Source: Macrostomum lignano (Eukaryota). Taken from it: a stretch of 24,442 bases of DNA. A model generated the notes under the pieces. It saw only the letters and a program-made list of their open reading frames with translations, was not told where the DNA came from and made no database searches. The position numbers were made by a program, and so were the translations under genes. Positions 1 through 19,060 of this stretch are shown here, piece after piece; positions within the stretch are counted from its first letter, which is position 1; each line of letters begins with the position of its first letter. The stretch covers positions 26,516-50,957 of the forward strand of contig NIVC01002887.1 of the NCBI GenBank assembly GCA_002269645.1. Direction: 5' to 3'.

Positions 1-2384
1 CTCATCAGCTGATCCTGTCTTCATTATCAAGTCCTCATCAGCTGCTGATCCGTCTGTCTTCATTATCAAGTCCTCATCAGCTGATCCTGTCTTCATTATC
101 AAGTCCTCATCAGCTGGTCATGTGTCTTCATTATCAAGTCCTCATCAGCTGATCCTGTCTTCATTATCAAGTCCTCATCAGCTGATCCTGTCTTCATTAT
201 CAAGTCCTCATCAGCTGATCCATGTGTCTTCATTATCAAGTACTCATCAGCTGGTCATGTGTCTTCATTATCAAGTCCTCATCAGCTAATCCTGTCTTCA
301 TTATCAAGTCCTCATCAGCTGATCCTGTCTTCATTATCAAGTCCTCATCAGCTGATCCTGTCTTCATTATCAAGTCCTCATCAGCTGATCCTGTCTTCAT
401 TATCAAGTCCTCATCAGCTGGTCATGTCTTCATTATCAAGTCCTCATCAGCTGATCCTGTCTTCATTATCAAGTCCTCATCAGCTGATCCTGTCTTCATT
501 ATCAAGTCCTCATCAGCTGATCTGTCTTCATTATCAAGTCCTCATCAGCTGTCATGTGTCTTCATTATCAAGTCCTCATCAGCTGATCCTGTCTTCATTA
601 TCAAGTCCTCATCAGCTGGTCATGTGTCTTCATTATCAAGTCCTCATCAGCTGATCCTGTCTTAATTATCAAGTCCTCATCAGCTGATCCTGTCTTCATT
701 ATCAAGTCCTCATCAGCTGATCCTGTCTTCATTATCAAGTCCTTATCAGCTGGTCATGTGTCTTCATTATCAAGTCCTCATCAGCTGATCATGTGTCTTC
801 ATTATCAAGTCCTCATCAGCTGGTCATGTGTCTTCATTATCAAGTCCTCATCAGCTGATCCTGTCTTCATTATCAAGTCCTCATCAGCTGGTCATGTGTC
901 TTCATTATCAAGTCCTCATCAGCTGATCCTGTCTTCATTATCAAGTCCTCATCAGCTGTCCTGTCTTCATTATCAAGTCCTCATCAGCTGATCCTGTCTT
1001 CATTATCAAGTCCTCATCAGCTGGTCATGTGTCTTCATTATCAAGTCCTCATCAGCTGATCCTGTCTTCATTATCAAGTCCTCATCAGCTGATCCTGTCT
1101 TCATTATCAAGTCCTCATCAGCTGGTCATGTGTCTTCATTATCAAGTCCTCATCAGCTGATCATGTGTCTTCATTATCAAGTCCTCATCAGCTGGTCATG
1201 TGTCTTCATTATCAAGTCCTCATCAGCTGATCCTGTCTTCATTATCAAGTCCTCATCAGCTGGTCATGTGTCTTCATTATCAAGTCCTCATCAGCTGATC
1301 CTGTCTTCATTATCAAGTCCTCATCAGCTGATCCTGTCTTCATTATCAAGTCCTCATCAGCTGTCATGTGTCTTCATTATCAAGTCCTCATCAGCTGATC
1401 CTGTCTTCATTATCAAGTCCTCATCAGCTGATCCTGTCTTCATTATCAAGTCCTCATCAGCTGATCCTGTCTTCATTATCAAGTCCTCATCAGCTGATCC
1501 TGTCTTCATTATCAAGTCCTCATCAGCTGATCCTGTCTTCATTATCAAGTCCTCATCAGCTGTCTGTCTTCATTATCAAGTCCTCATCAGCTGATCCTGT
1601 CTTCATTATCAAGTCCTCATCAGCTGATCCTGTCTTCATTATCAAGTCCTCATCAGCTGGTCATGTGTCTTCATTATCAAGTCCTCATCAGCTGGTCATG
1701 TGTCTTCATTATCAAGTCCTCATCAGCTAATCCTGTCTTCATTATCAAGTCCTCATCAGCTGATCCTGTCTTCATTATCAAGTCCTCATCAGCTGATCCT
1801 GTCTTCATTATCAAGTCCTCATCAGCTGATCCTGTCTTCATTATCAAGTCCTCATCAGCTGGTCATGTCTTCATTATCAAGTCCTCATCAGCTGATCCTG
1901 TCTTCATTATCAAGTCCTCATCAGCTGATCCTGCCTTCATTATCAAGTCCTCATCAGCTGGTCATGTGTCTTCATTATCAAGTCCTCATCAGCTGATCCT
2001 GTCTTCATTATCAAGTCCTCATCAGCTGATCCTGTCTTCATTATCAAGTCCTCATCAGCTGGTCATGTGTCTTCATTATCAAGTCCTCATCAGCTGGTCA
2101 TGTGTCTTCATTATCAAGTCCTCATCAGCTGATCCTGTCTTCATTATCAAGTCCTCATCAGCTGGTCATGTGTCTTCATTATCAAGTCCTCATCAGCTGA
2201 TCCTGTCTTCATTATCAAGTCCTCATCAGCTGATCCTGTCTTCATTATCAAGTCCTCATCAGCTGATCCTGTCTTCATTATCAAGTCCTCATCAGCTGAT
2301 CCTGTCTTCATTATCAAGTCCTCATCAGCTGATCCTGTCTTCATTATCAAGTCCTCATCAGCTGATCCTGTCTTCATTATCAAG
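1..2384. repeat. Minisatellite, 33-bp unit GATCCTGTCTTCATTATCAAGTCCTCATCAGCT mixed with a 35-bp variant (GGTCATGTGTC...), about 70 copies, truncated by the window start
   Basis: Periodicity read directly. The ORF track shows the 11-aa repeats SSSADPVFIIK / LSSPHQLILSS, with frame switches at the 35-bp variants. Confidence 0.97.
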
Positions 2385-2504: not shown

Positions 2505-3781
2505 GAGCGCTGGCGTGCTGGCCTTTAGTCAATGACGCGATCTGGATAATTTTAACAAAAAAACACGCAATTTGAATAATTCATCATTTCCATTATTCAA
2601 ATATTATTACGTTCGTTGCTGCTTGTAAGTTCCAGTGGATCCAATTTAGAAACTACATATTTGAGTACAGTTTTGTTAATTTATTTATTTCTGTGTTTAT
2701 ACATTAATTATCCCCGTTGTGATTGCAAATGTTAAATTATTCAACTCGTATATTCAACATACAATTTAGCCCTGTATGACTACTTTAAGTAGGTAAAAAC
2801 GAGGCAAATTTGAAATTTTCATTAAAAACCAGAGTAAAGCTAAATTGGCACTGTTTTATCCAGATTTTGAACACTAAAGCTTCGTCTCTGCTGTAGTCCC
2901 TGTTGGCATTAATGAATGTCAAAATATGTATAATTTATATATATCTACGTACTGATGAAAAGTATTCTTGTCATTTGTCATTTCGCTTTGTCACTAAACT
3001 ACTCTATTATTCAAAGCAAAAAGTTATTAATATTAGAATCTTGGTATATTTTTTCATGTTTTGTTTCAGTTTATTCAGAGTTCGCTTATGCAAGCGTCGA
3101 ATTTCTTTTTGATGACAGAAAGAGAACACAAAGCAATTACGTATAAAATATAAATTGAATAAAAAATACCTTACTTGAATCATTCAAGCACAGTTGAAAA
3201 TCCATACAATTGAAAGCTTTGTAAAAAATGAGTCAATTGATTTTTTATTTATGACTTCATGGAGGAAGTGAAGTTTTCAAGATGTTGAGAATTTTAACAG
3301 AAAATGTTAACTGACTCTTGAAACTACGATTACGCAAGGATTTCTACTTTGAGTAGTAAAAAACTGTTGTGGTGTCTATCTACTGTAATATACTGACACT
3401 GGCTGGCACTGTTGAAGTCTCCTGCAGTTGGCACGCTTTAGTTCACACAATAAATGATTCGCGTGACTCAAACAACATCCATCGAGGGGCGATACGTTAC
3501 GAGAAACTACTAGGCCATGCACCAGGCCTGTTTTATTGACTGTTAGATCAATGTTATACATTTTACTTGGTTCACTTTTCGCACATTTTTATTTACATAG
3601 GCTTAGCCCACTGTTAAATGATATTTACATGGACCAAGGGCTACACCTGCTGCATGACGCATTAGATGGCGTGGTTAATTAAAGGTAAACAAGTTCAATA
3701 TTTTTGTAAATCCATCATGCTTACACAGATCGACTCTGAAATTAATCTTCCAAAGAAAGCTCAGCAAATACTAGTCCATTT

Positions 3782-3795
3782 GTAGCCATGGCAAC
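3782..3795 (+). promoter_or_regulatory. RFX-type X-box GTAGCCATGGCAAC upstream of lectin paralog 1
   Basis: 13/14 match to the palindromic X-box GTTGCCATGGCAAC and fits RTHNYYWTRRNRAC. Lies 96-83 bp upstream of ATG 3878, with a counterpart upstream of paralog 2. Confidence 0.6.
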
Positions 3796-3877
3796 GGCCG
3801 CAGCAACAAACCTGCTCTGAATTTAGCTTTGTGATGCAAGCTAAGGCTGCTGCTAATTTCTGGCACTGCTAAAAGTG

Positions 3878-4648
3878 ATGAAGCTCCTAGCCACTGAGCT
3901 CGTGTCCGCTGCTCTGCTGCTGCTGACTGTCTGCCCAGCGCAGTCCCGAACGACGGTCTCCTGCCCGGCTCCGTTCAAGCGGCTGCGCACCGCCACCCAG
4001 CTGTGTCTGTTTGTCGAGTCCAACCAGAGCTACAGCTGGTGCTCCGCCAACCGAAGGTGCTCTGAGCTGGGCGGCGAGCTCATCAACTCGCCCGAGTCCC
4101 TGGCTCTTGTGAAATCTTGGAACCTGACTGATGGCAACTTCAACGGGTCTTGGTGGATCGGGCTGAGCGACCTGGCGGCTGAGGCCGGCACAAATCGGTC
4201 TGGCTGGCAGAGGGTCAACGACGGCGGCGTTCTGCCTAAAGAAGATTCGCTGTGGTACCACGGAGAGCCGAGCGGCAACTTCAAAGAGGATTGCATTCGG
4301 ATCTTACCTGTGGGCGATTCTCTAAGACTGAGCGACAGGTACTGCCACATTTTGCTCGGCTTCGTCTGCCAGTTCGTGGAGCCGCCTGCCGCCACCCAGT
4401 CGGCTGGCTACTGGACTCCGGCTGAGTTCACGAGAACCCGGACCGACACGTACTGCTGCTGCGATGAGCTGCAGCCAGTGGCCTCGCTGAAGGCCTGCCT
4501 GGTCAGAGCCTCCCTGTGTGGCAGCAGGTGCCGCAGCGCTCTGTACAACAGCCGGCTGGCCGCCTGCCGCCTGCTGCAGTTCGCCGACGCTCCGGTCGAC
4601 CCGGAAATCGAGCGCAGCCCGGACTGGGTCAAGCTGGTCAGGGGCTGA
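3878..4648 (+). CDS. Secreted C-type lectin domain + C-terminal PAN/Apple-like domain protein, paralog 1 (256 aa, intronless)
   Basis: Signal peptide MKLLATELVSAALLLLTVCPAQS. Long-form CTLD with CPAPF..LC, C..LGGEL, WIGLSD, W..GEPS, EDC, YC and FVC. C-terminal SLKAC...CRSALYN...CRLL resembles the PAN/Apple pattern. The start is set at ATG 3878 rather than the GTG at 3875. Confidence 0.9.
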   Translation: MKLLATELVSAALLLLTVCPAQSRTTVSCPAPFKRLRTATQLCLFVESNQSYSWCSANRRCSELGGELINSPESLALVKSWNLTDGNFNGSWWIGLSDLAAEAGTNRSGWQRVNDGGVLPKEDSLWYHGEPSGNFKEDCIRILPVGDSLRLSDRYCHILLGFVCQFVEPPAATQSAGYWTPAEFTRTRTDTYCCCDELQPVASLKACLVRASLCGSRCRSALYNSRLAACRLLQFADAPVDPEIERSPDWVKLVRG

Positions 4649-4910
4649 GTGGGTCAAGCTGGTCAGGGGCTGAGTGGGTCAAGCTGGTCAGGGTGTGAGT
4701 GGGTCAAGCTGGTCAGGAGCTGAGTGAGTCAAGCTGGTCAGGAGCTGAGCTGAGTGGGTCAAGCTGGTCAGGATGTGAGTGGGTCAAGCTGGTCAGGGTG
4801 TGAGTGGGTCAAGCTGGTCAGGGGCTGAGTGGGTCAAGCTGGTCAGGGTGTGAGTGGGTCAAGCTGGTCAGGAGCTGAGTGGGTCAAGCTGGTCAGGAGC
4901 TGGGTCAAGT
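4624..4910. repeat. 25-bp minisatellite (GTGGGTCAAGCTGGTCAGGGGCTGA and variants), about 11 copies; the first unit is the end of the lectin 1 CDS
   Basis: Direct periodicity. The unit overlaps codons WVKLVRG and the TGA stop. Confidence 0.95.
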
Positions 4911-5320
4911 AACCAACACAAACAAAAACTTTCTGAAGCAATCGGATTCACACATTTACAATCGTATATCAGTAGTAAGTCTTCATTTCGTAGTCCTTCT
5001 GACATAGCTGGCTCTCTTTGCTGCTTCTATTGTGATACATCATGTCTTTATCTTTTGTTTTTTGTTTTAGAGCTTCATGGCCTTTTTCCTTCATTTTGAA
5101 AGTAGAAAAGAAGTTTTACTATTATGTAATTTAACTCGTAAATGCCTGTTAACTCTTGTCAATTTTACGAACATGTAATGCCTTTGGCAATGCTAAATAT
5201 AACAAATGCTTGCACTTTTTCAGCTGAGTCGATCCATTACATGCATGCACTTTGAGTGTTCAAACGCAGAGCCTTAGGACTGCTGCCGGGGCAGAATACA
5301 TGCAGGTAAATGGGATGCCA

Positions 5321-5720
5321 ATGGCTGCTGAGGGTGCATGCAGGTTAATGGCACCCATGGCTGCTGAGGGTGCATGCAGGTTAATGGCACCCATGGCTGC
5401 TGAGGGTGCATGCAGGTTAATGGCACCCATGGCTGCTGAGGGTGCATGCAGGTTAATGGCACCCATGGCTGCTGAGGCATGCAGGTTAATGGCACCCATG
5501 GCTGCTGAGGGTGCATGCAGGTTAATGGCACCCATGGCTGCTGAGGGTGCATGCAGGTTAATGGCACCCATGGCTGCTGAGGACACATGCAGGTTAATGG
5601 CACCCATGGCTGCTGAGGGTGCATGCAGGTTAATGGCACCCATGGCTGCTGAGGGTGCATGCAGGTTAATGGCACCCATGGCTGCTGAGGACACATGCAG
5701 GTTAATGGCACCCATGGCTG
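5321..5720. repeat. 36-bp minisatellite ATGGCTGCTGAGGGTGCATGCAGGTTAATGGCACCC, about 11 copies
   Basis: Direct periodicity. It yields the spurious MAAEGACRLMAP repeat ORFs. Confidence 0.95.
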
Positions 5721-6014
5721 CATCCGAGCTCCTTGGCCACATTGGGTTCTCGCGCTTTTCGGTTCCATGCAGCTGCTGACGCGATCTTTTAGGCTCGAGG
5801 CCAGCAAATGAAAGTCCAACAAATGAGGCTGCTGAGGCATCCTCATCGCAGCGCTGCATCTTCCCGGTCAGCCGTACTGAAACCCTGCCTGCTATCGATG
5901 CCCAAGTATGTGCAGCGACATCGCTTGGCTTTTGAGCACTCGGCAGTGCCCGTCCGCTCTCATGGCCTGTCTCAGTGCCTTCAATCAGACAGGAGCTCAC
6001 GTTGCCGACAGACC

Positions 6015-6188
6015 GTCTGAGTCATCAGTCTGGGTCATCAGTCTGAGTCATCAGTCTGGGTCATCAGTCTGGGTAATCAGTCTGGGTCATCAGTCTGAGT
6101 CATCAGTCTGAGTCATCAGTCTGGGTCATCAGTCTGGGTCATCAGTCTGGGTCATCAGTCTGGGTCATCAGTCCGAGTCATCAGTCGG
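6015..6188. repeat. 13-bp minisatellite GTCATCAGTCTG(G/A), about 13 copies
   Basis: Direct periodicity. Confidence 0.93.
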
Positions 6189-6284
6189 GTAATAAGCAAA
6201 CAGATACAGAGCCATTCGTGTTAAAATGCATGAAATGCAGAGTCAAGACATGTGCAGTGCTAAACTGCATGCACTAAATTAAGA

Positions 6285-7520
6285 GAGGGTGCTTATTAAG
6301 TTCCCGGAAAATGCAGCTTAAAAATGCGCAAATCAAACAAATCTTAACCAAAGTTAGGGTTGTATGTTCTACGTTTGCTTGTAAAATTTTAGCTCGATCG
6401 GTCGCAATAATGCGCCGCAGTGACCATGCAAAGTTCGGCTGAGAACGTGGCCCCCCTGCCATCCCAGTCGATGGTGTATGAGTGGTTTGCGCGCTTCCAC
6501 TGCAGATCGGCCACTCTGGGGACGATGATCCCCGCGAGGGTTGCCGAGTTCGGCTGTTTCCGACGGAGTCGTTGCTGCTGTTCGACGCCACCTACTCGTA
6601 GACGAAAATCAGCGAGTGACGATTTGCTGGTTGGAGCAGCTCATCAGGGTGCGGATTCCACCATCATTAAGATCCTGCACCAGCACCTCGGCATGAGGAA
6701 GCTGTCTGCTCGCTGGGTGCCCCACCAGCTCAGCGCTGACCAGATGCGAGCCCGAGTTGAGTTCGCCGACCTCATGGCGGCCAGGTTTGACGGAGGCCGC
6801 TCAAAGTTGGTAGATAACATCCTCACTGGCGACAAAACCTGAGTCTACTTCTATGACCCAGAGACCAAGGAGCAGAGTCGGCAGTGGGTCACCAACGAGG
6901 AAGATGCTCCTCTCAAATTTCGTCGCGAGCGCAGCGTCGGAAAAGTGATGGCGGCCATTTTCTTCCGACGCAGCGGCATCCTGCCGCCAGTGCTGTTGCA
7001 GCAAGGCGCCACAGTGACGGCAGAATGGTACAGCACCGTCTGCTTGCCTCAGGTTCTGGAGGCGCTCGCATAGCAGCGGCCGAAGACGCTTGACAAAGTC
7101 ATCTTCCTCCATCAGGACAACGCTCCAGCGCACCGGGCACGAGTGACCCAAGGAGTTCCTTCAGGCGACCCAGCAGGCCCAGCTGCCGCATTCGGCATAT
7201 TCGCCGGACCTGGCGCCTGCTGACTTTTTCCTCTTTCCCAGGATGAAGAAAAGTCTGAAGGGGAGTGCTTCGACTCGAGGGAGGAGCTGGTTGTTGCGCT
7301 GCAAGCTGAGCTGGACAGCTTCATCAAAGCTGATCTTGGGGATGCTTCGACGCATGGTTCCAGCGCCTGCAAAAGTGACCCGATTTAGATGGAAATTATG
7401 TTGAGAACTGATAATAGACTGTGGTTGATTTCTATTATCGGTTGCCAAATCGGTTTGCGGTTGCCAAAGAAGCTTTTCCTACATTCCCAGCTGGGAAATA
7501 TTTTCCTGACTACTCGAGTC
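6285..7520 (+). mobile_element. Decayed mariner element (boundaries approximate, TIR pair not confirmed)
   Basis: Transposase relic plus a mariner-like left end (GAGGGTGCTTATTAAGTTCCC near 6287). No convincing matching right TIR was found. Confidence 0.6.
6426..7411 (+). pseudogene. Degenerate mariner (DD34D) transposase relic
   Basis: Motifs across frames: VYEWFARF, KLSARWVPHQL, LTGDKT*VYFYDPETKEQS, HQDNAPAH, YSPDLAPADFFLFP, GNYVEN*. Internal stops at 6840-6842 and 7071-7073, several frameshifts, and a shortened N-terminus. Spacing is D34D once the frame is corrected. Confidence 0.92.
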
Positions 7521-7963
7521 ACTAAAAAGACTTAAAGCAATGAAGTGCCCCATTATTTCTGGTGCAACTGCTTCTTGAATGATGAATTTTTATGTACCGG
7601 AATTTTTGCTAGATTTCTGGAGAAGCAGCCGCGGGAACCTGCACAATGGGCCCTGCGGCAGATGGTTGGTTGGAATTGAGGCTGAGCCAATTAGCAAACT
7701 ACAGGTATGAGGCAGCAGGTTCTATCAAGTCATAAAGCTTCACCAATTTCTCATTAATTATTTGAAGCTGCAAGAAAAAAGTGACTGGAAATTTCTAGGA
7801 AGAAGTCCGTCAGCAATGGCGGAGGCCCGTTTGCCATTGCTGGCGAAACTGCAAGAGAAAAATTCTGAGAATCTACCTTGTTAGCGAAGAGGCTGCCGGC
7901 TTCTGCCCTACCAGCACGCAAGCGGATAATACAGTTGGCGTCATAAGTTTGATGAGGAGGCTG

Positions 7964-7977
7964 GTTGCCATGGGAAC
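7964..7977 (+). promoter_or_regulatory. RFX-type X-box GTTGCCATGGGAAC upstream of lectin paralog 2
   Basis: 13/14 match to GTTGCCATGGCAAC, 90-77 bp upstream of ATG 8054. Confidence 0.6.
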
Positions 7978-8053
7978 CAGTCAGCAGCAGCTAAAAAACC
8001 GGCCGTACAGCAACCAAAAGCTTTCATTTCACAGAAAAATATTCTCAGGCAAA

Positions 8054-8818
8054 ATGAAGCTTCATGTCGGCTGCTCTGCTCTGGCAGCGGCTCTGCTGCT
8101 GTGTGTCAGCCTCGGACAGTCCGAGACCGTCCCCTGTCCGGCCCCGTTCCAGCTGTACTCGGCCGCCCAGCTGTGCCTCTTCATCCAGCCCAACCAGAGC
8201 TACAGCTGGTGCTCCGCCAACCGAGTGTGCTCTGAGCTGGGCGGCGAGCTCATCAACTCGCCTGAGTCCATCGCTGCCTTGGCTTCTGTGAACCTGCAGA
8301 CTCTCGGCTACTCAACTGACATGTGGACTGGACTCAACGACCTGGCGTCCGAGGCCAACACCAGCAGGTCCGGCTGGCAGAGGGTCAGCGGTGGCGGCAG
8401 TTTTCCACTACACGAGTCGCTGTGGCACCCGACGGAGCCAAATGGAAGCCCTGGAGCGCACTGCCTCCGGTTTTTATACCCTAGCGGCCAGACTCGGCTC
8501 GGAGACAGGACCTGCAACGATTCACTCGGCTTCGTCTGCCAGTTTATGAAGCCGCCTGCCGCCACCAAGTCGGCTGGCTACTGGACTCCGGCTGAGTTCA
8601 CGAGAACCCGGACCGACACGTACTGCTGCTGCGATGAGCTGCAGCCAGTGGCCTCGCTGAAGGCCTGCCTGGTCAGAGCCTCCCTGTGTGGCAGCAGGTG
8701 CCGCAGCGCTCTGTACAACAGCCGGCTGGCCGCCTGCCGCCTGCTGCAGTTCGCCGACGCTCCAGTCGACCCGGAAATCGAGAGCAGCCCGGACTGGGTC
8801 AAGCTGGTCAGGGTCTGA
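8054..8818 (+). CDS. Secreted C-type lectin domain + PAN/Apple-like domain protein, paralog 2 (254 aa, intronless)
   Basis: Signal peptide MKLHVGCSALAAALLLCVSLGQS places the start at ATG 8054, not 7949. CTLD with WTGLND and EPN motifs. The C-terminal region is almost identical to paralog 1. Confidence 0.9.
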   Translation: MKLHVGCSALAAALLLCVSLGQSETVPCPAPFQLYSAAQLCLFIQPNQSYSWCSANRVCSELGGELINSPESIAALASVNLQTLGYSTDMWTGLNDLASEANTSRSGWQRVSGGGSFPLHESLWHPTEPNGSPGAHCLRFLYPSGQTRLGDRTCNDSLGFVCQFMKPPAATKSAGYWTPAEFTRTRTDTYCCCDELQPVASLKACLVRASLCGSRCRSALYNSRLAACRLLQFADAPVDPEIESSPDWVKLVRV

Positions 8819-9168
8819 GTGGGTCAAGCTGGTCAGGGGCTGAGTGGGTCAAGCTGGTCAGGAGCTGAGTGGGTCAAGCTGGTCAGGGGCTGAGTGGGTC
8901 AAGCTGGTCAGGGTCTGAGTGGGTGAAGCTGGTCAGGGTCTGAGAGGGTCAAGCTGGTCAGAGTGTGAGTGGGTCAAGCTGGTCAGGGTGTGAGTGGGTC
9001 AAGCTGGTCAGGGTGTGAGTGGGTCAAGCTGGTCAGGGTGTGAGTGAGTCGAGCTGGTCAGGAACTGAGTGAGTCAAGCTGGTCAGGGTGTGAGTGGGTC
9101 AAGCTGGTCAGGGTGTGAGTGGGTCAAGCTGGTCAGGGTCTGAGTGGGTCAAGCTGGTCAGAAGCTGA
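8794..9168. repeat. 25-bp minisatellite of the same family as 4624-4910, about 15 copies; the first unit is the end of the lectin 2 CDS
   Basis: Direct periodicity. Overlaps WVKLVRV*. Confidence 0.95.
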
Positions 9169-9573
9169 GCTGATAGGCTTGTCGTAGGAGAAAGTATGAG
9201 TAAGAAAGTAATTAATAATCGAGAAAGGTAGTCTTTGAGTAATATATTTAGGATTTTATTGGGACGCCGAGCATAAAATTGTGACAGTAAAAGCTTGACG
9301 CTAGAAGGCAACGATCAAAAGCTATTTATGTAATCAAAGAAAAGTTTTAAAATGTTTAACAAGCTTTTTAGTTAAGAAATTGTTGGTGTCCAATTTTACA
9401 TTTCTGTGCAATGAAAATTTCGAATGAAATACAAGTGAAGGCGCCATTAGTTAATTTTGCACACAGAGTGAAGTGAATCAACCTGTGAGATGCCAAATCA
9501 TATTGTTTAATTACTGCATAACTCTTGTGGTTTTTTATCAAACCGTTTTTTTAACATAAAGCTCATTTCCTCG

Positions 9574-10292
9574 GAACTCATCTCCCCTGAACTCATCTCG
9601 CCTGAACTCATCTCGCCTGAACTCATCTCGCCTGAACTCATCTCGCCTGAACTCAGCTCCCCTGAACTCATCTCCCCTGAACTCATCTCCCTTGAACTCA
9701 TCTCCCCTGAACTCATCTCCCTGAACTCATCTCACCTGAACTCATCTCCCCTGAACTCATCTCCCCTGAACTCATCTCCCCTGAACTCATCTACCCTGAA
9801 CTCATCTCACCTGAACTCATCTACCTTGAACTCATCTCACCTGAACTCATCTCCCTTGAACTCATCTCCCCTGAACTCATCTCCCCTGAACTCATCTACC
9901 CTGAAATCATCTACCCTGAACTCATCTCCCTGAACTCATCTCCCCTGAACTCATTCCCCTGAACTTATCTCCCTGAACTCATCTCCCTGAACTCATCTCC
10001 CCTGAACTCATCTCCCCTGAACTCATCTCCCCTGAACTCATCTCCCCTGAACTCATCTCCCTGAACTCAGCTCCCCTGAACTCATCTCCCCTGAACTCAT
10101 CTCCCCTGAACTCATCTCACCTGAACTCATCTCACCTGAACTCATCTCACCTGAACTTATCTCCCCTGAACTCATCTCCCCTGAACTCATCTCACCTGAA
10201 CTCATCTCCCCTGAACTCATCTACCCTGAAATCATCTACCCTGAACTCATCTCACCTGAACTCATCTCACCTGAACTCATCTACCCTAAACT
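9574..10292. repeat. 15-bp minisatellite CCTGAACTCATCTCC and variants, about 48 copies, just downstream of the PRODH-family stop
   Basis: Direct periodicity. The minus frame gives MSSGE repeats. Confidence 0.96.
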
Positions 10293-10327
10293 CGCCATCA
10301 ACGCCTGTGAAGTCGTCACCCACCCAC

Positions 10328-10741
10328 CTAAGCCCGACCAGCCCGCAGCGCGGCTCTCAGCACAGATTTCTCCTCCCGCACCCCATCGAATATGAGCTTG
10401 TTCTCGTTGGCCCTGCGCACCAAATACAGCAGAGTTTCGTCCACGCTGCCGTACGGAATGGACTTGTACACCTGGTAACCAGACTGGGCTAGCGGAACCG
10501 AGATGTAGTCTGCCATGCCGTACAGTTGGCCGAACGACACAGCGCCGCTTTCTGGCGATATGCAACGCCTACGCATGCCGTCCAAGCACAGACTGATGCT
10601 GTTCGAATTCTGCGTTGCCAGGATCACTTCGTGACGGCTGGAGTTGCTGCCCTCGGTTACTATGCGATCTAGGGCGATTGAGACTGCTCGGTTGTACGAA
10701 CAGTTAGTCTCTTCGAGGCTGCTCCAGACTCGACTGCGACC
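10328..10741 (-). CDS. PRODH2: Hydroxyproline/proline dehydrogenase (PRODH2-like), exon 3 (last coding exon)
   Basis: Acceptor ctgcag|GGT at 10742/10741, phase 0. Motifs SYNR, FGQLYGM, YKSIPYGS, YLVRRANEN. TAG at 10330-10328. The acceptor choice is supported by motif spacing relative to human PRODH2. Confidence 0.85.
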   Translation of the reverse strand, partial: GRSRVWSSLEETNCSYNRAVSIALDRIVTEGSNSSRHEVILATQNSNSISLCLDGMRRRCISPESGAVSFGQLYGMADYISVPLAQSGYQVYKSIPYGSVDETLLYLVRRANENKLIFDGVREEKSVLRAALRAGRA

Positions 10742-10784
10742 CTGCAGTTTGAGATTATAGTAACTGCTGCAGGGAGTGGGCCAC

Positions 10785-11080
10785 AAACAACCGGTGTCAA
10801 GATCGGATTGGGTCATAGACAACCGGTGTCGAGGAATCGGATTGGGCCATACAAAACCGGTGTCGGGGATCGGATTGGGCCATAGATAACCTGAGTCAGA
10901 GGATCAGATTGGGCCATAGACGGATCAGATTGGGCCATAGACAACCTGAGTCAGGGGATCAGATTAGGCCATAGACAACCGGTGTCGGGGAATCGGATTG
11001 GCCCATAGAAAACCGGTGTCGGGGATCGGATTGGGCCACAGACAGCCTGTGTCAGAGGATCAAATTGGGCCATAGACAAG
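10785..11080. repeat. ~33-bp degenerate minisatellite GACAACCGGTGTCGGGGATCGGATTGGGCCATA, about 9 copies, filling intron 2
   Basis: Direct periodicity with substitutions and one truncated unit. Confidence 0.9.
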
Positions 11081-11122
11081 CTGTCACAGGCAAGTCTCCA
11101 ATGTAATTGGCATATCACTAAC

Positions 11123-11719
11123 CCCGTTGATCTCGGCTCCTTGACCGTTCTCCCAGTGCAAATAGGCTCCACGAACAATTTTCGCGCCGGCTCTAACGCC
11201 GCGCCGACTAGTCGACAGAAGAAGATCCATGTGCCAGTTGTAGGTGTCGATGGTGTCTCTTAGATAGCACTGGTAGGTGTTAAACACCATGCAATAATCC
11301 TCGGCATTGTACACCGTGGCCAGAGCCAGATAAAACAGCGAAATCCCAGGATTAATATGGCTGTACTCGGCATCGATCAAAATCTGCACGGAATGTCGTT
11401 TGGCCGCGTCGAAAACTCGACGAGTTCGAACGACTGCGGCTAGAAGCTGGTCGGAGAGGCGACCAGCGTCCGAGGCGGCTGGTAGGAGCCGGCGAAGCAG
11501 ATCCTGCTGCTGCTGTCGGGACTTTGTGGAGCACGGCGTGTCAGGAACCGCCAGCTGCAGTAGCTGCGACAGCACCTCGGAGGCGGCGTCGGCCACTGCC
11601 AGATCGCCGTGCAGTGTAGCCAGCTTCTGAAGCAGCGACGTCGGCATCAGAGAGGTCAGCTTCAGCTGCATCTTCGGCCGGTTGCTGTTCAGCTGGGCCG
11701 ACAGTTCCACGGCCCGCAC
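11123..11719 (-). CDS. PRODH2: PRODH2-like, exon 2
   Basis: Acceptor ccccacag|GTG at 11720/11719 and donor GGG|gttagt at 11123/11122. 597 nt, phase 0/0. Motifs MQLKLTSL, LIDAEY, NTYQCYLRD, KIVRGAY. Confidence 0.88.
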
Positions 11720-11729
11720 CTGTGGGGTC

Positions 11730-11880
11730 CGGTGTGATCGTGATCTTGTGACTGTGAGTGTGATCGTGTGACTAGGTGTGATCTTGTGACTGTGAGTGTG
11801 ATCGTGTGACTAAGTGTGATTGTATCGCTGAGTGAATGTACAACTGTGATTGCGTGACTGAGTGTGATCGTGTGACGTTA
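11730..11880. repeat. Degenerate GTGTGATCGTGTGACT-type short tandem repeat near the intron 1 acceptor
   Basis: Recurrent TGTGATC(G/T)TGTGACT motifs. Confidence 0.75.
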
Positions 11881-11923
11881 GTGTAATTGAAAAATGCAAT
11901 CGTGTGATCGTGTAACTATGATA

Positions 11924-12262
11924 GTGTGTCTGTGAATGTAGTGGTGTGTCTGTGAGTGTAATGTTGTGTCTGTGAGTGTAATGTTGTGTCTGTGAGTGTA
12001 ATGTTGTGTCTGTGAGTGTAATGTTGTGTCTGTGAATGTAATGGTATGTCTGTGAATGTAATGGTGTGTCTGTGAGTGTAATGGTGTGTCTGTGAATGTA
12101 ATGGTGTGTCTGTGAATGTAATGGTGTGTCTGTAAGTGTAATGGTGTGTCTGTGGGTGTAATGGTGTGTCTGTGAGTGTAATGTTGTGTCTGTAAGTGTA
12201 ATGGTGTGTCTGTGAGTGTAATATTGTGTCTGTGAATGTAGTGGTGTGTCTGTGAGTGGTAT
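11924..12262. repeat. 20-bp minisatellite TGTGAGTGTAATG(T/G)TGTGTC, about 17 copies, in intron 1
   Basis: Direct periodicity. Confidence 0.93.
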
Positions 12263-12807
12263 TGGTGTGACTTTGAGTAGGACAATGTAACTATTAGTAT
12301 GATAGTGTGACTGGAGTGTTATAATAGGACCGTGATGTGATGATGTGACTGTGAGTCAGATATTGTGACTGGGAAAGCGATAAGGACTGCGTGATCAAAT
12401 ATTATGAATGCACTTCACTTGTCCCTCCTTTCCTTATAGGATTATTATCACATAATTATATTATGACTGAAAATGTGCCACGAGCGGGTTTGAATTAGGA
12501 TATAGATAAATTTACTGGCTTAACCTAATAAGCCCTCCACTGGCTAGGATAATTCACGAATCGCAATTACTGGCTAGCTAAATTATCGCAGTCATCGATC
12601 TTAGCGATCTTAGCCTGTCACGCTCCTTAGCCAGCTGATAAGAGAACAAGAAATAAAGAGAAAATGCGGTCTGGAAGAATGTTGGGCAACTCTTGTAAAA
12701 GTACAAGCCACTGACCAGGGGAGCACTCTGACCCCATTTTTAAGAAAATATTCCACAGATAATAGAAGTTTATGAATTTTAGATTGTACGCTTTAAAAAG
12801 AATCTCG

Positions 12808-13080
12808 ACCCACCTCACTCCCGACATCCACCTCACTCCCGACATCCACCTCACTCCCGACATCCACCTCACTCCCGACATCCACCTCACTCCCGACACC
12901 CACCTCACTCCTGACATCCACCTCACTCCCGACCACCCCGCTACTGACACCCACCTCACTCCCAACATCCACCTCACTCCTGACATCCACCTCAGTCCCA
13001 ACACCCACCGCTACTGACACCCACCTCACTCCCGACATCCACCTCACTCCTGACATCCACCTCACTCCCGACACCCACCA
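12808..13080. repeat. 18-bp minisatellite CCACCTCACTCCCGACAT, about 14 copies, beginning about 8 nt inside the intron 1 donor
   Basis: Direct periodicity (LTPDIH repeats). Confidence 0.93.
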
Positions 13081-13088
13081 ATTTTCAC

Positions 13089-13724
13089 CTGCTTGGCTGT
13101 GTTCTCTTCGTACAGGCGCGTCAACTCCTCATCTGAAAGTTTTCTCATCGGCTCCTCCATTGGCACGGCGATCATTGGCCGGAGTCCTTGGCGCCGTTGC
13201 GCCTCGGCTGTCTGGCGCAGCTCAGCTTCAGTGGCGCCGCCTACAAACTGGCCGAAGAAGCTGCGCCTCATCAGGGCGTCGAAGCAGCGTTGGCCCAGCA
13301 GGCGCCGGCCCAGGCGCATCCACAGAAGCGCCCGGCTTACGAACAGATCGATTGAGCACAAGTGCAGGACGGCTAAGGCGCGGATTAACTCTGCTCTAGT
13401 CTTGCTGGCCTGCACCGCCCGATAATCCAGGAAATTGATGTCACTTTTGGCGTCTCTGGCATTACTGCTAGATGTACTTTTCGTGCCCATTGAAAGGCAT
13501 TTTCTACTTTCGATTGCGGTGAATATGACGTCATTGGGTGGTTCGTTAAAAATTTTAGTTCCAATCGTACTTCCGGTTGAGCCGATGCCAGCTGGTCCAC
13601 TTCCGGTTACAATTCCGGTTATAGGTAGCTGTCCAGCATCGGTCCTGGGTTCGATTCCAACGCAGAGCAGACGAGCGGAGACCAGTCGTTGGAGAGCAAA
13701 TTTTGGAAGTCCGCGTAGCAACAT
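13089..13724 (-). CDS. PRODH2: PRODH2-like, exon 1 (mitochondrial presequence-like N-terminus); the spliced product is about 548 aa
   Basis: ATG 13724. Arg-rich, acid-free N-terminus. ELIRALAVLHLC...LLGQRCF..LMRRSFFGQFVGG and LRPMIAVPMEE match the PRODH family. Donor CAG|gtgaaa at 13089/13088; 636 nt, phase 0. Confidence 0.88.
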
Positions 13725-13942
13725 CCGACTGCTTCAGTCAGGTGAGATCTTGAATTGGAATGCGGTCGGCGATACGTGAGTGTAGTTGTGTGAGCATCGT
13801 CTCATTTTGTGGTCCTTGGTCTGAGTGTGTGATCGGGGATCTCTGAGAATGTAGTCCTGAATGTCTGGAAATACTGTCCTGAGTGTCTGGGAATGCTGTC
13901 CTGAGTCTAGCTCGTATGAGGGTGTAACCCCAAATAAAGAAA

Positions 13943-14042
13943 GGGTGTGGCCTCACTAACAGGAGGGTGTGGCCTCACTAACATGAGGGTGTGGCCTCAC
14001 TAACAGGAGGGTGTGGCCTCACTAACAGGAGGGTGTGGCCTC
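13943..14042. repeat. 22-bp repeat GGAGGGTGTGGCCTCACTAACA, about 4.5 copies, in the PRODH2-ENaC intergenic region
   Basis: Direct periodicity. Confidence 0.9.
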
Positions 14043-15060: not shown

Positions 15061-17346
15061 ATGCACGGCAGAGACCGACAGCTGGCCGCAGCTGCAGCCG
15101 CCCTACTGGCCCGGTCTCGAGGCGTGGCCAACCTGGCCGGCACTCGTCAAGGAGGCTCCGCCACCAGCTCGGCCAGCGAAGGCCCCCGAGCCACCATGCG
15201 CGGCGCTTTCATGTACGTCGGCCGGTTCGCCGACCACACCAGCATGCACGCAGTGGCGCAGCTGTTCAGAGCGGACAGCTACAGCAGGCGGCTGTTCTGG
15301 CTGGCTCTGGCCTGCCTGACCACAGCTGCCGGCTGCCTGCACGCCTACCTCACCGTCAAGCAGTTCAACACGACGCCTGTGAACACTCTGATACTCAATC
15401 AGGGCGTGGACACTCTGTTCCCGGATGTGACCCTCTGCAACCTGCGCCCGATGCCCGCCGCCCTGATGCACTACAACACGCCAGCCAGAGCTGAAGCCGA
15501 GGCTGGCATGGCCGACCTGCTGGCCAGGCTGAGGCCGATCTACGCCAAGCAGTACTCCGGCCGGCCCAGAAAGCTGGCCGACTTGTTAAGCTCGCACGAC
15601 TACTTCAACTGGTACCAGTTCCTGCAGCACTACTGGGCCAGCCGGCCCACAGCTCAGCTGGGCTACAACCTCAGCCTGGGCCTGGTCGGCTGTCTCTACA
15701 AAAAGGCGCGCTGCAAGTGGACAGATTTCCATCTGGTGCAGAGCTCGCACCATTGGAACTGTTGGAGCTTCCGGCCGAAGGACCGCAGCGTCCAGGGCAA
15801 CGGGCCGGGCGACGGGCTAGACGTGATCTTGTACACCAGCAGCATGCCGAGGGACCAGGTGTCGGCGACCGGCGACTATCACGTGATCTACCCGCCCAGG
15901 GTGAACCGGACGGTGCTGGAGCAGCTGGGCACCGTGTTCGGCAAGGCCGGCATGCAGACGTCCAACGGGGTTCGAGTCCTGCTGCACGAGCCGGACACCT
16001 ACCCGCACCTGTACTGGGAGGGCGTCGACGTTGGCAACGGCTGGAGCTCGGACATCCGGTTTCGAATGACCCGCAATCTGTACGTGAACCGCAGCAGGCA
16101 CCGCTGCGTTGAGGACTACGGCCGGGTGTCCTACTGGGTGTCCGAGCCGGACACTCGCCGGGTGTTCAAGCGGCGCCTGAAGGATTGCGTGGTTCAACTG
16201 TGGCAGGCGCGGCTGCGGGCGGACTGCTCCTGCGAGTCCACCTTCCTGCCCACCGGCAACCGGAGCAACCTGTGCCACCGGGTGGCCGACGGCGGAACCG
16301 GGCGGCGGAACTACAGCGGCTGGAAGGCGGCCCAGCTGCAGCGATTCAACCGGGTTGAAGGCGCCGTGCGGACGAAAATGTCCGACAGTTTCGTGGCCGA
16401 GTGCTCCCGGCTGCAGGCCTGCCAGCGCGACGAGTTCAGCTACGCAAGCGCCGGGGTGCCCTGGCCGTCGCCATCCGACCTGGAGGCCTTCGTGCACACC
16501 TTCATCGTGTCCGGCGGCCAGCGGCCAGGCGGCAGGCGGTTGGGCGAGCTCGGGCTGCTCGATCTGATTCTGGCTGACAGCGATGCCGGCGGCGGCAGCG
16601 CGCACAGTCCGTGGAACATCAGCCTACGCTTTGTGCGCGAGAACTTCGTCAAGGTGCACGTGTACGCCGAGAATTCGAAGGGCACCATGATGCGCGAGTC
16701 GCCGTCCTACACCCTGGTCGAAGTGCTCTCTGAACTCGGCGGCATCTTCGGCCTGTGGGCCGGAATGTCTCTCGTGACCTTCGTTGAACTGTTCGACTTC
16801 TTCGTTACCTTCGTAGTCAAGTGCGTCCAAGGCGTGACGCTTCATCTGAGTCGTCGCGATCGGTTGGAGGAGCGGCGGCGGCGACGGCAAAACGGCGGCG
16901 GCTTGGCGGCGACGTCGGCATTTGTGGCAGCCGCTGCAGCAGCCGCCGCCGCCGCCACCGCGGCAGCCTCTGGAGGCGGCGGCGGAGCGGCAAAGCACAA
17001 CGACCAGCCGCGCCAGCAGCCAGCTGACATCGCCATGATGGACGCTGACGACGCCGAGGAAGACGACAGCGCCGCCGGCCTCGGCGAAGAGATGCAGCTG
17101 ATGCGAGTTCTCCGATGCGGCCGGGTGGCAGGGGCGGACGGCTTCAGCCAGCCTGGCGAGTTCTGCCCCCGGCCGAGGTCTGACGCCCTCCCGCCCCGGT
17201 TTCCACTGCATCAACCGAAGCCCGCACAGATTTTTTGCATTTTGGATCCCAGGAAGAAAAATGCATCCGAGATTTTTGCTTTCATTTCCCCTCACTGTCG
17301 ATGCTTCAGACCGATAATACAGGAATGCAAATTGCGCGGGAGATAA
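15061..17346 (+). CDS. DEG/ENaC (amiloride-sensitive, ASIC/FaNaC/ENaC superfamily) channel subunit, intronless, 761 aa
   Basis: FADHTSMH pre-TM1, TM1 RLFWLALACL, FPDVTLCN, NCWSF, GPGDGLDVIL, GVRVLLHEPDTYP, Cys-rich thumb (DC..CSC..C), TM2 LSELGGIFGLWAGMSLVTFVEL with a GxS filter. First in-frame ATG has gccATG context. The exact C-terminus is less certain. Confidence 0.92.
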   Translation: MHGRDRQLAAAAAALLARSRGVANLAGTRQGGSATSSASEGPRATMRGAFMYVGRFADHTSMHAVAQLFRADSYSRRLFWLALACLTTAAGCLHAYLTVKQFNTTPVNTLILNQGVDTLFPDVTLCNLRPMPAALMHYNTPARAEAEAGMADLLARLRPIYAKQYSGRPRKLADLLSSHDYFNWYQFLQHYWASRPTAQLGYNLSLGLVGCLYKKARCKWTDFHLVQSSHHWNCWSFRPKDRSVQGNGPGDGLDVILYTSSMPRDQVSATGDYHVIYPPRVNRTVLEQLGTVFGKAGMQTSNGVRVLLHEPDTYPHLYWEGVDVGNGWSSDIRFRMTRNLYVNRSRHRCVEDYGRVSYWVSEPDTRRVFKRRLKDCVVQLWQARLRADCSCESTFLPTGNRSNLCHRVADGGTGRRNYSGWKAAQLQRFNRVEGAVRTKMSDSFVAECSRLQACQRDEFSYASAGVPWPSPSDLEAFVHTFIVSGGQRPGGRRLGELGLLDLILADSDAGGGSAHSPWNISLRFVRENFVKVHVYAENSKGTMMRESPSYTLVEVLSELGGIFGLWAGMSLVTFVELFDFFVTFVVKCVQGVTLHLSRRDRLEERRRRRQNGGGLAATSAFVAAAAAAAAAATAAASGGGGGAAKHNDQPRQQPADIAMMDADDAEEDDSAAGLGEEMQLMRVLRCGRVAGADGFSQPGEFCPRPRSDALPPRFPLHQPKPAQIFCILDPRKKNASEIFAFISPHCRCFRPIIQECKLRGR

Positions 17347-17445: not shown

Positions 17446-18144
<699 letters not shown>

Positions 18145-18637
18145 CCCTGTGTCTGTCCGTCTCTCCAATAAAGCTCACGCAGCCAATCGGTGCCCGCAGC
18201 CGCATGAAGAGCAAAAGAGAATTAATTAAAGAGGAATTACTGCTTTTATCATTCTTTTGCCGCCAAGTCTGAGAAAAGTCCCAAGGGATATTCTCACAGT
18301 GTGGCAGAAAATAGGTTGATGGAGCAGACCGTCCCTGAGTCCCAATGGACATGCTTCTTCTACGCACATTAGTTCTTAGTGATCGCCTGCGAATGTGCAA
18401 AGTGCAATTCTGTCATGAAAATTGAATAAGATTAAGACTGTTTTCTGACCACATTTCTGATTCTAAAGGTTTCTATTTTGTAATAAACTGGCTTGGAAAT
18501 GCCTTTGAAAGATTTTCAAATGTTATTTATAGTCTATTTGGAAAAGACAGAATTAACGTAAACAAGATCAATGATTAAAGTTTATGAAAATTTCATCAAT
18601 TTAACCACTAGTTTGATCAGGGATTTGATAATTACGT

Positions 18638-19060
18638 GTCAGGAATGTAGAGGTGGGTCAGGAATGTAGTGATGAGGTGGATCAGGAATGTAGTGATGAG
18701 GTGGATCAGGAATGTAGTGATGAGGTGGGTCAGGAATGTAGTGATGAGGTGGATCAGGAATGTAGTGATGAGGTGGATCAGGAATGTAGTGATGAGGTGG
18801 GTCAGGAATGTAGTGATGAGGTGGATCAGGAATGTAGTGATGAGGTGGATCAGGAATGTAGTGATGAGGTGGATCAGGAATGTAGTGATGAGGTGGATCA
18901 GGAATGTAGTGATGAGGTGGGTCAGGAATGTAGTGATTGGCTGGGTCAGGAATGTAGTGATTGGCTGGGTCAGGAATGTAGTGATGAGGTGGGTCAGGAA
19001 TGTAGTGATTGGCTGGGTCAGGAATGTAGTGATGAGGTGGTTCAGGAATGTAGTGATGAG
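18638..19060. repeat. 24-bp minisatellite GGATCAGGAATGTAGTGATGAGGT, about 17 copies
   Basis: Direct periodicity (DQECSDEV repeats). Confidence 0.96.

What the first reader, a model, noticed from the sequence alone, without database searches (positions are those of the whole stretch)
3782..7977. Both secreted lectin paralogs carry a near-perfect RFX X-box about 90 bp upstream of the ATG
Seen: GTAGCCATGGCAAC (3782-3795, -96 to -83) and GTTGCCATGGGAAC (7964-7977, -90 to -77). Each is 13/14 identical to the X-box palindrome, while the rest of the two upstream regions barely align. A forkhead-like GTAAACA lies at 3685-3691, which is weak evidence alone. Established: RFX/DAF-19 binds X-boxes at about this distance to drive ciliary genes, with FoxJ1 as a partner for motile cilia. 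Inference: these secreted lectin-PAN proteins are RFX targets made by ciliated epidermal or sensory cells, i.e. a cilia-programme-coupled surface recognition or mucus module rather than structural ciliary genes.
Basis: partly seen in the sequence, partly recalled or inferred. Interest (0 to 1): 0.72.

Follow-up and report, generated by a model that had tools for sequence, protein, structure and literature searches.

The report
Conserved RFX X-box upstream of two lectins
Two neighbouring flatworm genes for secreted sugar-binding proteins each keep a near-perfect binding site for the RFX transcription factor about 90 bases before their start codon, so they are probably RFX-controlled, but nothing here shows that they are made in ciliated cells.

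Summary
GTAGCCATGGCAAC (3782-3795) and GTTGCCATGGGAAC (7964-7977) are the only sites in the 24.4 kb window within two mismatches of the X-box palindrome (0.10 expected). They lie at -96 and -90 from the start codons of two tandem single-exon paralogues. Each gene encodes a signal peptide, a C-type lectin domain and a PAN-like domain, in a Macrostomum-type flatworm.

The paralogues have dS of about 0.65-0.95 in their 5' halves, and the sequence next to the boxes matches at chance level. The boxes are 12/14 identical. Both differences fall on degenerate positions of the nematode consensus GTHNYYATRRNAAC. A second short block with an extra RFX half-site (AGCAAC) is also kept.

I read these as RFX sites kept by selection (about 0.6). 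Expression in ciliated cells is only an inference (about 0.35). The forkhead 7-mer occurs at chance frequency, and the second promoter has no forkhead core at all.

No genomic DNA of relatives could be retrieved, so family-wide enrichment is untested. This is a plausible new target of a known regulator, not a new kind of system.

The parts
3782..3795 (+). X-box 1, GTAGCCATGGCAAC, at -96..-83 of the lectin-1 ATG. Near-palindromic candidate site for an RFX dimer.
   Evidence: It matches both GTNRCC NN RGYAAC and GTHNYYATRRNAAC exactly and has one mismatch to the ideal palindrome.
7964..7977 (+). X-box 2, GTTGCCATGGGAAC, at -90..-77 of the lectin-2 ATG.
   Evidence: It matches GTHNYYATRRNAAC on both strands and has one mismatch to GTNRCC NN RGYAAC. 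It is 12/14 identical to box 1, and the two differences are at consensus positions 3 (H) and 11 (N).
3796..3810 (+). Second conserved block of promoter 1, GGCCGCAGCAACAAA. It holds an extra RFX half-site, AGCAAC (3802-3807), 12 bp after the right half of the box.
   Evidence: gapped alignment of box-to-ATG segments, z 2.7, p 0.03, plus a half-site scan. Weak evidence.
8001..8019 (+). Second conserved block of promoter 2, GGCCGTACAGCAACCAAAA, with half-site AGCAAC (8009-8014). A 23-nt insert separates it from the box.
3878..4648 (+). Lectin-1 gene. Single exon, 256 aa: signal peptide (MKLLATELVSAALLLLTVCPAQS), C-type lectin domain, Cys-rich PAN-like C-terminal domain.
   Evidence: ORF. Lectin_C 30.3 bits against a cut-off of 22.6; full-length relatives end at the same W.K[FL] position. 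PAN_1 in 16/24 relatives. PDB C-type lectin domains.
8054..8818 (+). Lectin-2 gene. Single exon, 254 aa, same architecture, 70% identical to lectin-1.
   Evidence: N-terminal 166 codons dN 0.37, dS 0.68; C-terminal 88 codons dS 0.015.
4625..4902 (+). 25-bp minisatellite that begins inside the last codons of lectin-1 and includes the stop codon. Its unit is the 3' end of the coding sequence.
8795..9161 (+). The same 25-bp minisatellite at the 3' end of lectin-2 (14.7 copies).

Best explanation
The two 14-mers are real binding sites for a dimer of an RFX transcription factor in the proximal promoters of two tandemly duplicated, single-exon genes. The genes encode secreted C-type-lectin/PAN-like proteins in a Macrostomum-type flatworm.

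Shown: the sites match the X-box consensus, sit at nearly the same distance from the ATG, and are the only well-conserved stretch in upstream regions that have otherwise diverged to randomness.

Inferred:
- The ancestral gene already carried the box plus a nearby AGCAAC half-site, and selection has kept both since the duplication.
- An RFX dimer bound there recruits the transcription machinery to a TATA-less start region lying in the ~80 bp between box and ATG.
- Both lectins are therefore transcribed wherever that RFX factor is active. The most likely place is ciliated cells (multiciliated epidermis, ciliated sensory neurons or protonephridia), because in planarians an Rfx orthologue and its motif track the cilia gene modules.

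My probabilities are about 0.6 that the boxes are functional RFX sites and about 0.35 that they drive expression in ciliated cells. The confidence below is for the whole chain read loosely: RFX-bound, activating, in RFX-positive cells.
For: - Motif match and rarity: the only 2 sites in 24.4 kb within two mismatches of the palindrome, 0.10 expected. Exact matches to GTHNYYATRRNAAC, 0.13 expected. From that density the chance of a hit in one 300-bp promoter is 1.6e-3, and in both independently 2.6e-6.
- Island of conservation: flanks match at chance, 15/60 and 21/90. Nothing aligns upstream of the box (z 0.1-0.4). A shared 14-mer of at least 12/14 at an offset within 10 bp occurs in 2.8% of dinucleotide shuffles.
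- Divergence: with dS 0.64-0.95 in the adjacent coding half, neutral retention of at least 12/14 has p of about 0.003-0.024. Both substitutions fall on the degenerate consensus positions (p 0.033).
- Extra half-site: an RGYAAC half-site lies in a second weakly conserved block.
- The box is not coding. Its ATG gives a 10-codon uORF in one gene and an in-frame extension that would bury the signal peptide in the other.
- Literature: RFX DNA specificity is conserved from fungi to animals, with X-box = GTNRCC N0-3 RGYAAC (PMC10530576). Most validated C. elegans X-boxes lie within 250 bp of the ATG, and X-boxes conserved between homologous promoters had about 4% false positives (PMC1794439). Drosophila targets were found by conservation of the box in sequence and distance (PMC2375033). 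In a planarian, an Rfx orthologue is linked to cilia modules whose promoters are enriched in the motif (PMC12660999). Two C-type lectin genes, C14A6.1 and C54D1.2, are about 3-fold lower in daf-19(-) arrays (supplement 3 of PMC1794439).
Against: - There are only two promoters, and they are paralogous, so the two boxes are probably one ancestral event and not two independent ones.
- A single X-box in a promoter (p about 1.6e-3) is something a reader scanning many windows for many motifs will meet by chance.
- The retention statistics are modest (p 0.003-0.03).
- Single-genome X-box scans in C. elegans have high false-positive rates (PMC1794439).
- The lectins have no homology to ciliary proteins.
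- No forkhead partner site is shared.
- Transcription start sites, RFX genes and expression data of this species were not available. No orthologous or family-wide promoter could be fetched.
- RFX factors also repress, and some family members are not ciliogenic (PMC3245922).
Confidence: 0.45

Rival explanations
1. RFX binds the boxes but the output is not the cilia programme. Either a repressing RFX keeps the lectins silent outside one tissue or condition, or a non-ciliogenic RFX paralogue (RFX4/6- or RFX5/7-type) drives them in gland, gut or immune-type cells.
For: RFX1 represses MAP1A through X-boxes, yeast RFX represses the RNR genes, and a distal X-box represses F25B4.2 in C. elegans (PMC3245922). 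The proteins are lectins with a fast-evolving recognition domain (dN/dS 0.54, 43% amino-acid divergence). That fits immune or surface recognition better than cilia. No shared forkhead site was found.
Against: Near-palindromic promoter-proximal X-boxes at about -100 are the classic layout of activated ciliary targets (PMC1794439). In the one flatworm studied, the Rfx motif tracks cilia modules (PMC12660999). The RFX gene set of this species is unknown.
Confidence: 0.2
2. The boxes are a neutral relic. One chance X-box-like sequence in the ancestral promoter has simply not decayed yet in either copy, and no factor uses it.
For: The two boxes are not independent, because they belong to paralogues. 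One hit per 300-bp promoter has p of about 1.6e-3, which is reachable given how many promoters and motifs a scan looks at. If local divergence is at the low end (dS 0.64), keeping at least 12/14 has p of only 0.024. The C-terminal halves of the genes have been homogenised (4/264 nt differ), so patchy conversion occurs at this locus.
Against: The 60 nt and 90 nt directly flanking the boxes are at chance identity, so no conversion tract or slow-evolving patch covers them. Both substitutions sit at the consensus's degenerate positions. The distance to the ATG is kept within 6 bp although the intervening sequence has gained or lost about 23 nt.
Confidence: 0.2
3. A different factor recognises the palindrome, for example an NFI-type protein using the TGGCA/TGCCA half-sites inside the box, or an uncharacterised flatworm factor.
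For: Both boxes contain TGCCA or TGGCA (read directly). That NFI binds TTGGC N5 GCCAA and weaker half-sites is my own knowledge.
Against: The NFI half-sites are abutting and in the wrong orientation and spacing for an NFI dimer. All 12 conserved positions, including the outer GT..AAC that NFI does not need, fit the RFX consensus.
Confidence: 0.07
4. The conserved feature is the ATG in a strong Kozak-like context (GCCATGG). It would act as an upstream start codon that controls translation or gives an alternative N-terminus.
For: Both boxes centre on CCATGG. In lectin-2 this ATG is in frame with the main ORF.
Against: In lectin-1 the same ATG opens a 10-codon uORF, while in lectin-2 it adds 28 residues in front of the signal peptide, so neither frame nor peptide is conserved. 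Full-length relatives start with the signal peptide. Conservation extends 6 bases either side of the ATG in palindromic form, which a start context does not require.
Confidence: 0.03

Closest known systems
C. elegans DAF-19 X-box promoters (che-2, osm-5, bbs genes, xbx-1)
   Same: A 14-bp imperfect palindrome fitting GTHNYYATRRNAAC, about 100 bp upstream of the ATG, in a compact TATA-less promoter. Sometimes further X-box-like elements lie nearby (PMC1794439, PMC3245922).
   Different: Those targets are mostly ciliary structural or transport genes. Here the products are secreted lectins with no ciliary homology. Binding and RFX dependence are shown there and not here.
Drosophila dRfx targets defined by X-boxes conserved in sequence and distance between species (PMC2375033)
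   Same: The same logic of evidence: a box conserved in sequence and in distance to the ATG while surrounding sequence diverges.
   Different: That study compared orthologues across 412 genes. This is one pair of paralogues within one genome.
Vertebrate RFX2/RFX3-FOXJ1 multiciliated-cell programme (PMC5245798, PMC7498320)
   Different: It needs cooperating forkhead binding. No shared forkhead site is present here.
MHC class II X box bound by the RFX5 complex (my own knowledge, not tested)
   Same: An RFX-type site roughly 100 bp upstream of genes for immune recognition molecules.
   Different: The MHC X1 box is a weak, non-palindromic site. It works only within the S-X-X2-Y module with RFXAP, RFXANK and CIITA, and is restricted to vertebrates. 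The boxes here are near-perfect palindromes without such a module.
Repressing RFX sites (human RFX1 on MAP1A, yeast Crt1 on RNR genes; PMC3245922)
   Same: The same DNA motif near the start of the gene.
   Different: The output is silencing. Whether these boxes activate or repress is unknown.

Membership tests
RFX X-box (site for an RFX dimer) | Sequence fits GTNRCC N0-3 RGYAAC, or the nematode form GTHNYYATRRNAAC | tested here: met
   Box 1 fits both exactly. Box 2 fits the nematode form exactly and the general form with one mismatch.
RFX X-box (site for an RFX dimer) | Promoter-proximal position, typically within 250 bp upstream of the ATG | tested here: met
   -96 and -90; criterion from PMC1794439.
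RFX X-box (site for an RFX dimer) | Conserved in sequence and distance between homologous promoters | tested here: met
   12/14 identical at offsets 6 bp apart, with flanks at chance identity. This was tested only between paralogues. Orthologues could not be fetched.
RFX X-box (site for an RFX dimer) | Bound by an RFX protein in vitro or in vivo | not testable with these tools
   Needs EMSA, DAP-seq or ChIP.
RFX X-box (site for an RFX dimer) | Gene expression depends on the RFX factor and on the box | not testable with these tools
   Needs rfx RNAi and a reporter with the box mutated.
RFX-FoxJ1 motile-cilia module | Forkhead site accompanying the X-box in the target promoters | tested here: not met
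   GTAAACA occurs 2 times in the window against 1.55 expected. The forkhead core RYMAAYA occurs 5 times within 400 bp of lectin-1 and 0 times for lectin-2.
Ciliome (ciliary structural or transport genes) | Homology to a known ciliary protein | tested here: not met
   Only Lectin_C in Pfam. The PDB profile search returns C-type lectin domains only.
C-type lectin-like domain proteins | Lectin_C profile match above the curated cut-off | tested here: met
   30.3 and 32.4 bits against a cut-off of 22.6. 21/24 family members match. Mannose-receptor and DC-SIGN domains come top in PDB.
C-type lectin-like domain proteins | Ca2+/sugar-binding motifs (EPN or QPD, and WND) | tested here: inconclusive
   Read from the alignments. 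Lectin-2 has EPN and lectin-1 has EPS. The WND position reads L-x-D in both. Sugar binding is therefore not assured.
PAN/Apple domain | PAN profile match in the C-terminal Cys-rich domain | tested here: inconclusive
   The window proteins give no PAN hit at E up to 1, but 16/24 aligned relatives hit PAN_1 (best 1.8e-5). The AlphaFold model was too poor to use (pLDDT 49.5).

The most novel reading that the evidence does not exclude
In macrostomid flatworms the RFX regulon has been extended beyond cilium building to a fast-evolving family of secreted lectin/PAN recognition proteins. Ciliated surface or sensory cells would then secrete their own glycan-binding coat under the same master switch that builds their cilia. 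This would be a direct transcriptional coupling of ciliated-cell identity with surface recognition or mucus defence.
Probability: 0.3. Interest if true: 0.55.

Novelty: new member of a known kind. Interest (0 to 1): 0.35.

Why it matters
If the boxes work as read, they would be among the first candidate direct RFX targets in a flatworm that are secreted effectors and not cilium parts. They would also show how a master regulator of an organelle can pick up cell-type-specific secreted products.

In practice, a promoter of under 1 kb with a defined 14-bp switch would be a handy ciliated-cell or RFX-reporter driver for Macrostomum transgenesis (method in PMC5730564).

If the boxes are not functional, the case is a useful warning that a near-perfect motif shared by paralogues counts as one event, not two.

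Tried and rejected
1. Family-wide and orthologue test, all attempts empty.
- The word-index protein search with lectin-1 found nothing.
- The search with a 24-member family profile returned one Logan protein. Its 1.8-kb contig looks like a transcript and has no X-box.
- Exact look-ups of lectin-1 and of the M. lignano channel protein found no contig.
- Two metagenome scans found no relative.

2. Global MAFFT alignment of the two upstream regions did not even align the boxes. It was replaced by anchored and permutation tests.

3. The box as coding sequence or uORF was rejected, because the frames are not conserved.

4. The box as part of an RNA gene was rejected: no Rfam or tRNA hit in the window. 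The box as part of a repeat or mobile element was rejected: the self-BLAST shows no other shared upstream sequence.

5. The forkhead partner motif is at chance frequency and is not shared.

6. Structure prediction to confirm the PAN fold failed. Only 3 sequences were allowed in the alignment, and the model had pLDDT 49.5, too poor for a fold search.

7. Literature searches for Macrostomum + RFX, and for DAF-19 + X-box + C-type lectin, found no direct precedent. A lectin search in the Drosophila X-box gene tables was empty.
Full report
**What is in the window**

The closest database protein to the window's single-exon DEG/ENaC channel gene (15061-17346, Pfam ASC) is Macrostomum lignano A0A1I8HRJ3. 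Identity is 72% over the first half and 55% over the second. The window therefore comes from a macrostomid flatworm: M. lignano itself (a paralogue) or a related species.

About a third of the window is minisatellite. It also holds a proline dehydrogenase gene on the minus strand, two mariner/Tc1-type transposase remnants, and the two lectin genes.

**The genes**

- The ORFs 3878-4648 and 8054-8818 encode proteins of 256 and 254 residues that are 70% identical.
- Each begins with a typical signal peptide and has a C-type lectin domain above Pfam's cut-off.
- A full scan of 1.84 billion representative proteins found 480 relatives. Many are proteins of about 240 residues that cover the whole query and end a few residues after the same W-x-K-[FL] motif. 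The window genes are therefore complete single exons.
- The closest relatives are lectin portions of chimeric M. lignano gene models, at about 40% identity.
- PAN_1 hits 16 of 24 aligned relatives but not the window proteins themselves. 'Lectin-PAN' is thus supported at family level only.
- An AlphaFold model from the three sequences I was allowed to use was too poor to help (pLDDT 49.5).

**The observation**

- They are the only sites in the window within two mismatches of GTTGCCATGGCAAC. The expectation is 0.10, and no shuffle of 100 gave two.
- Both match the nematode consensus GTHNYYATRRNAAC exactly, with 0.13 expected.
- Box 1 is the only exact match in the window to GTNRCC N0-3 RGYAAC.
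- From the shuffle density, a hit in one 300-bp promoter has probability 1.6e-3. Hits in two independent promoters have probability 2.6e-6.

**Are the two boxes independent?**

Probably not, and this is the main caveat. The genes are tandem paralogues.

- BLAST homology runs from +20 of the coding sequence through a 25-bp minisatellite after the stop codon, and does not extend upstream.
- Divergence rises toward the 5' end. The last 88 codons differ at 4 of 264 bases (dS 0.015), which points to recent gene conversion.
- The lectin domain has dS 0.64 and the signal-peptide region dS 0.95.
- Anchored on the box, the 60 bases to the left and 90 to the right are 25% and 23% identical, which is chance level.
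- Gapped alignment with permutation finds nothing upstream of the box (z 0.1-0.4). It finds a weak signal between box and ATG (z 2.7, p 0.03). That signal comes from a block GGCCG..CAGCAAC.AAA, which abuts the box in gene 1 (3796-3810) and lies 23 nt further on in gene 2 (8001-8019). The block contains a further RFX half-site, AGCAAC.

The simplest history is one ancestral promoter with a box and a half-site. Everything else in that promoter has since been randomised.

**Is the retention more than chance?**

- A shared 14-mer of at least 12/14 at an offset within 10 bp arises in 2.8% of dinucleotide-preserving shuffles of the two 300-bp regions.
- If the site evolved at the synonymous rate of the adjacent coding half, keeping at least 12 of 14 has p of 0.024 to 0.003. 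At the saturation that the flanks actually show, p is 3e-6.
- The two differences, A/T at position 3 and C/G at position 11, fall on two of the three degenerate positions of the nematode consensus (p 0.033).
- Together this is reasonable but not overwhelming evidence for purifying selection with the specificity expected of RFX.

**Alternatives for the palindrome**

- The central ATG sits in a strong start context. It opens a 10-codon uORF in gene 1 and an in-frame 28-codon extension that would bury the signal peptide in gene 2. Nothing coding is conserved.
- This argues that transcription starts downstream of the box, or that the leader is removed by trans-splicing. Either is consistent with a promoter element. 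This step is inference.
- No Rfam family or tRNA overlaps the region.
- No repeat family carries the box.
- NFI-type half-sites are present inside the box, but with the wrong spacing and orientation.

**What the literature adds**

- RFX DNA-contacting residues and the recognition sequence are conserved from fungi to animals. The X-box is the inverted repeat bound by a dimer (PMC10530576).
- The motif has high information content (PMC10393296).
- In C. elegans most validated boxes lie within 250 bp of the ATG. Single-genome scans are full of false positives, whereas boxes conserved between homologous promoters were expressed in ciliated neurons in 24 of 25 tests (PMC1794439).
- In Drosophila, targets were likewise found through conservation of the box in sequence and distance (PMC2375033).
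- In the planarian Schmidtea, an Rfx orthologue is connected to cilia gene modules whose promoters are enriched in the motif (PMC12660999). The RFX-cilia link therefore exists in flatworms.
- In the daf-19 microarray table of PMC1794439, the C-type lectin genes C14A6.1 and C54D1.2 are about 3-fold lower without DAF-19. The authors stress that many such genes may be indirect targets.
- RFX sites can also repress (PMC3245922).

**The forkhead hint**

GTAAACA at 3685-3691 is real, but the 7-mer occurs twice in the window against 1.55 expected. The looser forkhead core occurs five times within 400 bp of gene 1, which is an AT-rich stretch, and not at all within 400 bp of gene 2. Nothing supports a shared FoxJ1 partner site.

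**What could not be done**

It needs flatworm genomic DNA, which none of the collections yielded.

**Verdict**

- The best reading is that the boxes are functional RFX sites kept by selection in the proximal promoters of both paralogues (about 0.6).
- That they switch the lectins on in ciliated cells is plausible by analogy (about 0.35) but untested. Repression or a non-ciliogenic RFX factor is a serious rival, and a neutral relic cannot be excluded.
- This is a candidate new target of a well-known regulator, not a new kind of element.
- Macrostomum transgenesis with proximal promoters works (PMC5730564), so the decisive reporter experiment is practical.

Noticed in passing
window 4625-4902 and 8795-9161: A 25-bp minisatellite (10.9 and 14.7 copies) starts inside the last codons of each lectin gene. 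The stop codon and the final W-V-K-L-V-R residues are part of the first repeat unit. Some units read AGGGTGTGAGT, which resembles a splice donor.
   Followed up: partly
window 3878-4648 vs 8054-8818: The paralogues are mosaic. The C-terminal 88 codons differ at 4 of 264 bases (dS 0.015). The N-terminal 166 codons have dS 0.68, dN 0.37 and 43% amino-acid divergence. This looks like recent gene conversion of the PAN-like half and fast change in the lectin half.
   Followed up: yes
proteins P0006, P0030, P0034, P0084 and others: Secreted proteins of about 240 residues (signal peptide, C-type lectin domain, PAN-like domain, ending W.KF) form a family. Many members are known only from short ENA, JGI or Logan contigs of unidentified, probably invertebrate, origin. 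The M. lignano members are buried in chimeric gene models (A0A1I8JSG6, A0A1I8HX01).
   Followed up: partly
window 13942-14042: A 22-bp tandem repeat (4.6 copies) lies between the divergently oriented proline dehydrogenase and DEG/ENaC genes. It carries four copies of GTGGCCTCACTAAC, each one mismatch from the loose X-box consensus. It fails the stricter nematode consensus and is probably chance.
   Followed up: partly
window 15061-17346: A DEG/ENaC (amiloride-sensitive channel) gene is encoded as one uninterrupted ORF of 761 codons, with an alanine/glycine-rich low-complexity tail. It is 72% and 55% identical to M. lignano A0A1I8HRJ3 in its two halves.
   Followed up: partly
window 10328-13724, minus strand: A proline dehydrogenase gene in at least three exons (13062-13724, 11084-11719, 10328-10822). 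Its introns are largely filled with minisatellites of 15-, 18-, 20- and 34-bp units.
   Followed up: no
window 6274-7151 and 19682-20863: Two decayed mariner/Tc1-type transposase remnants (Pfam HTH_Tnp_Tc3_2; Transposase_1 plus HTH_32). The first ends about 800 bp upstream of X-box 2 and so bounds the lectin-2 promoter.
   Followed up: no
window 1-2384, 5299-5721, 9562-10293, 17446-18162, 18650-19060, 21403-22320, 22825-24442: The minisatellite load is very high, with units of 4 to 36 bp and up to 71 copies. These arrays produce many long spurious ORFs in all frames.
   Followed up: no
window 7441-7447 and 7460-7466: Two monomeric RFX-type sites, GTTGCCA, lie 19 bp apart about 600 bp upstream of lectin-2. 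Nothing comparable lies upstream of lectin-1.
   Followed up: no
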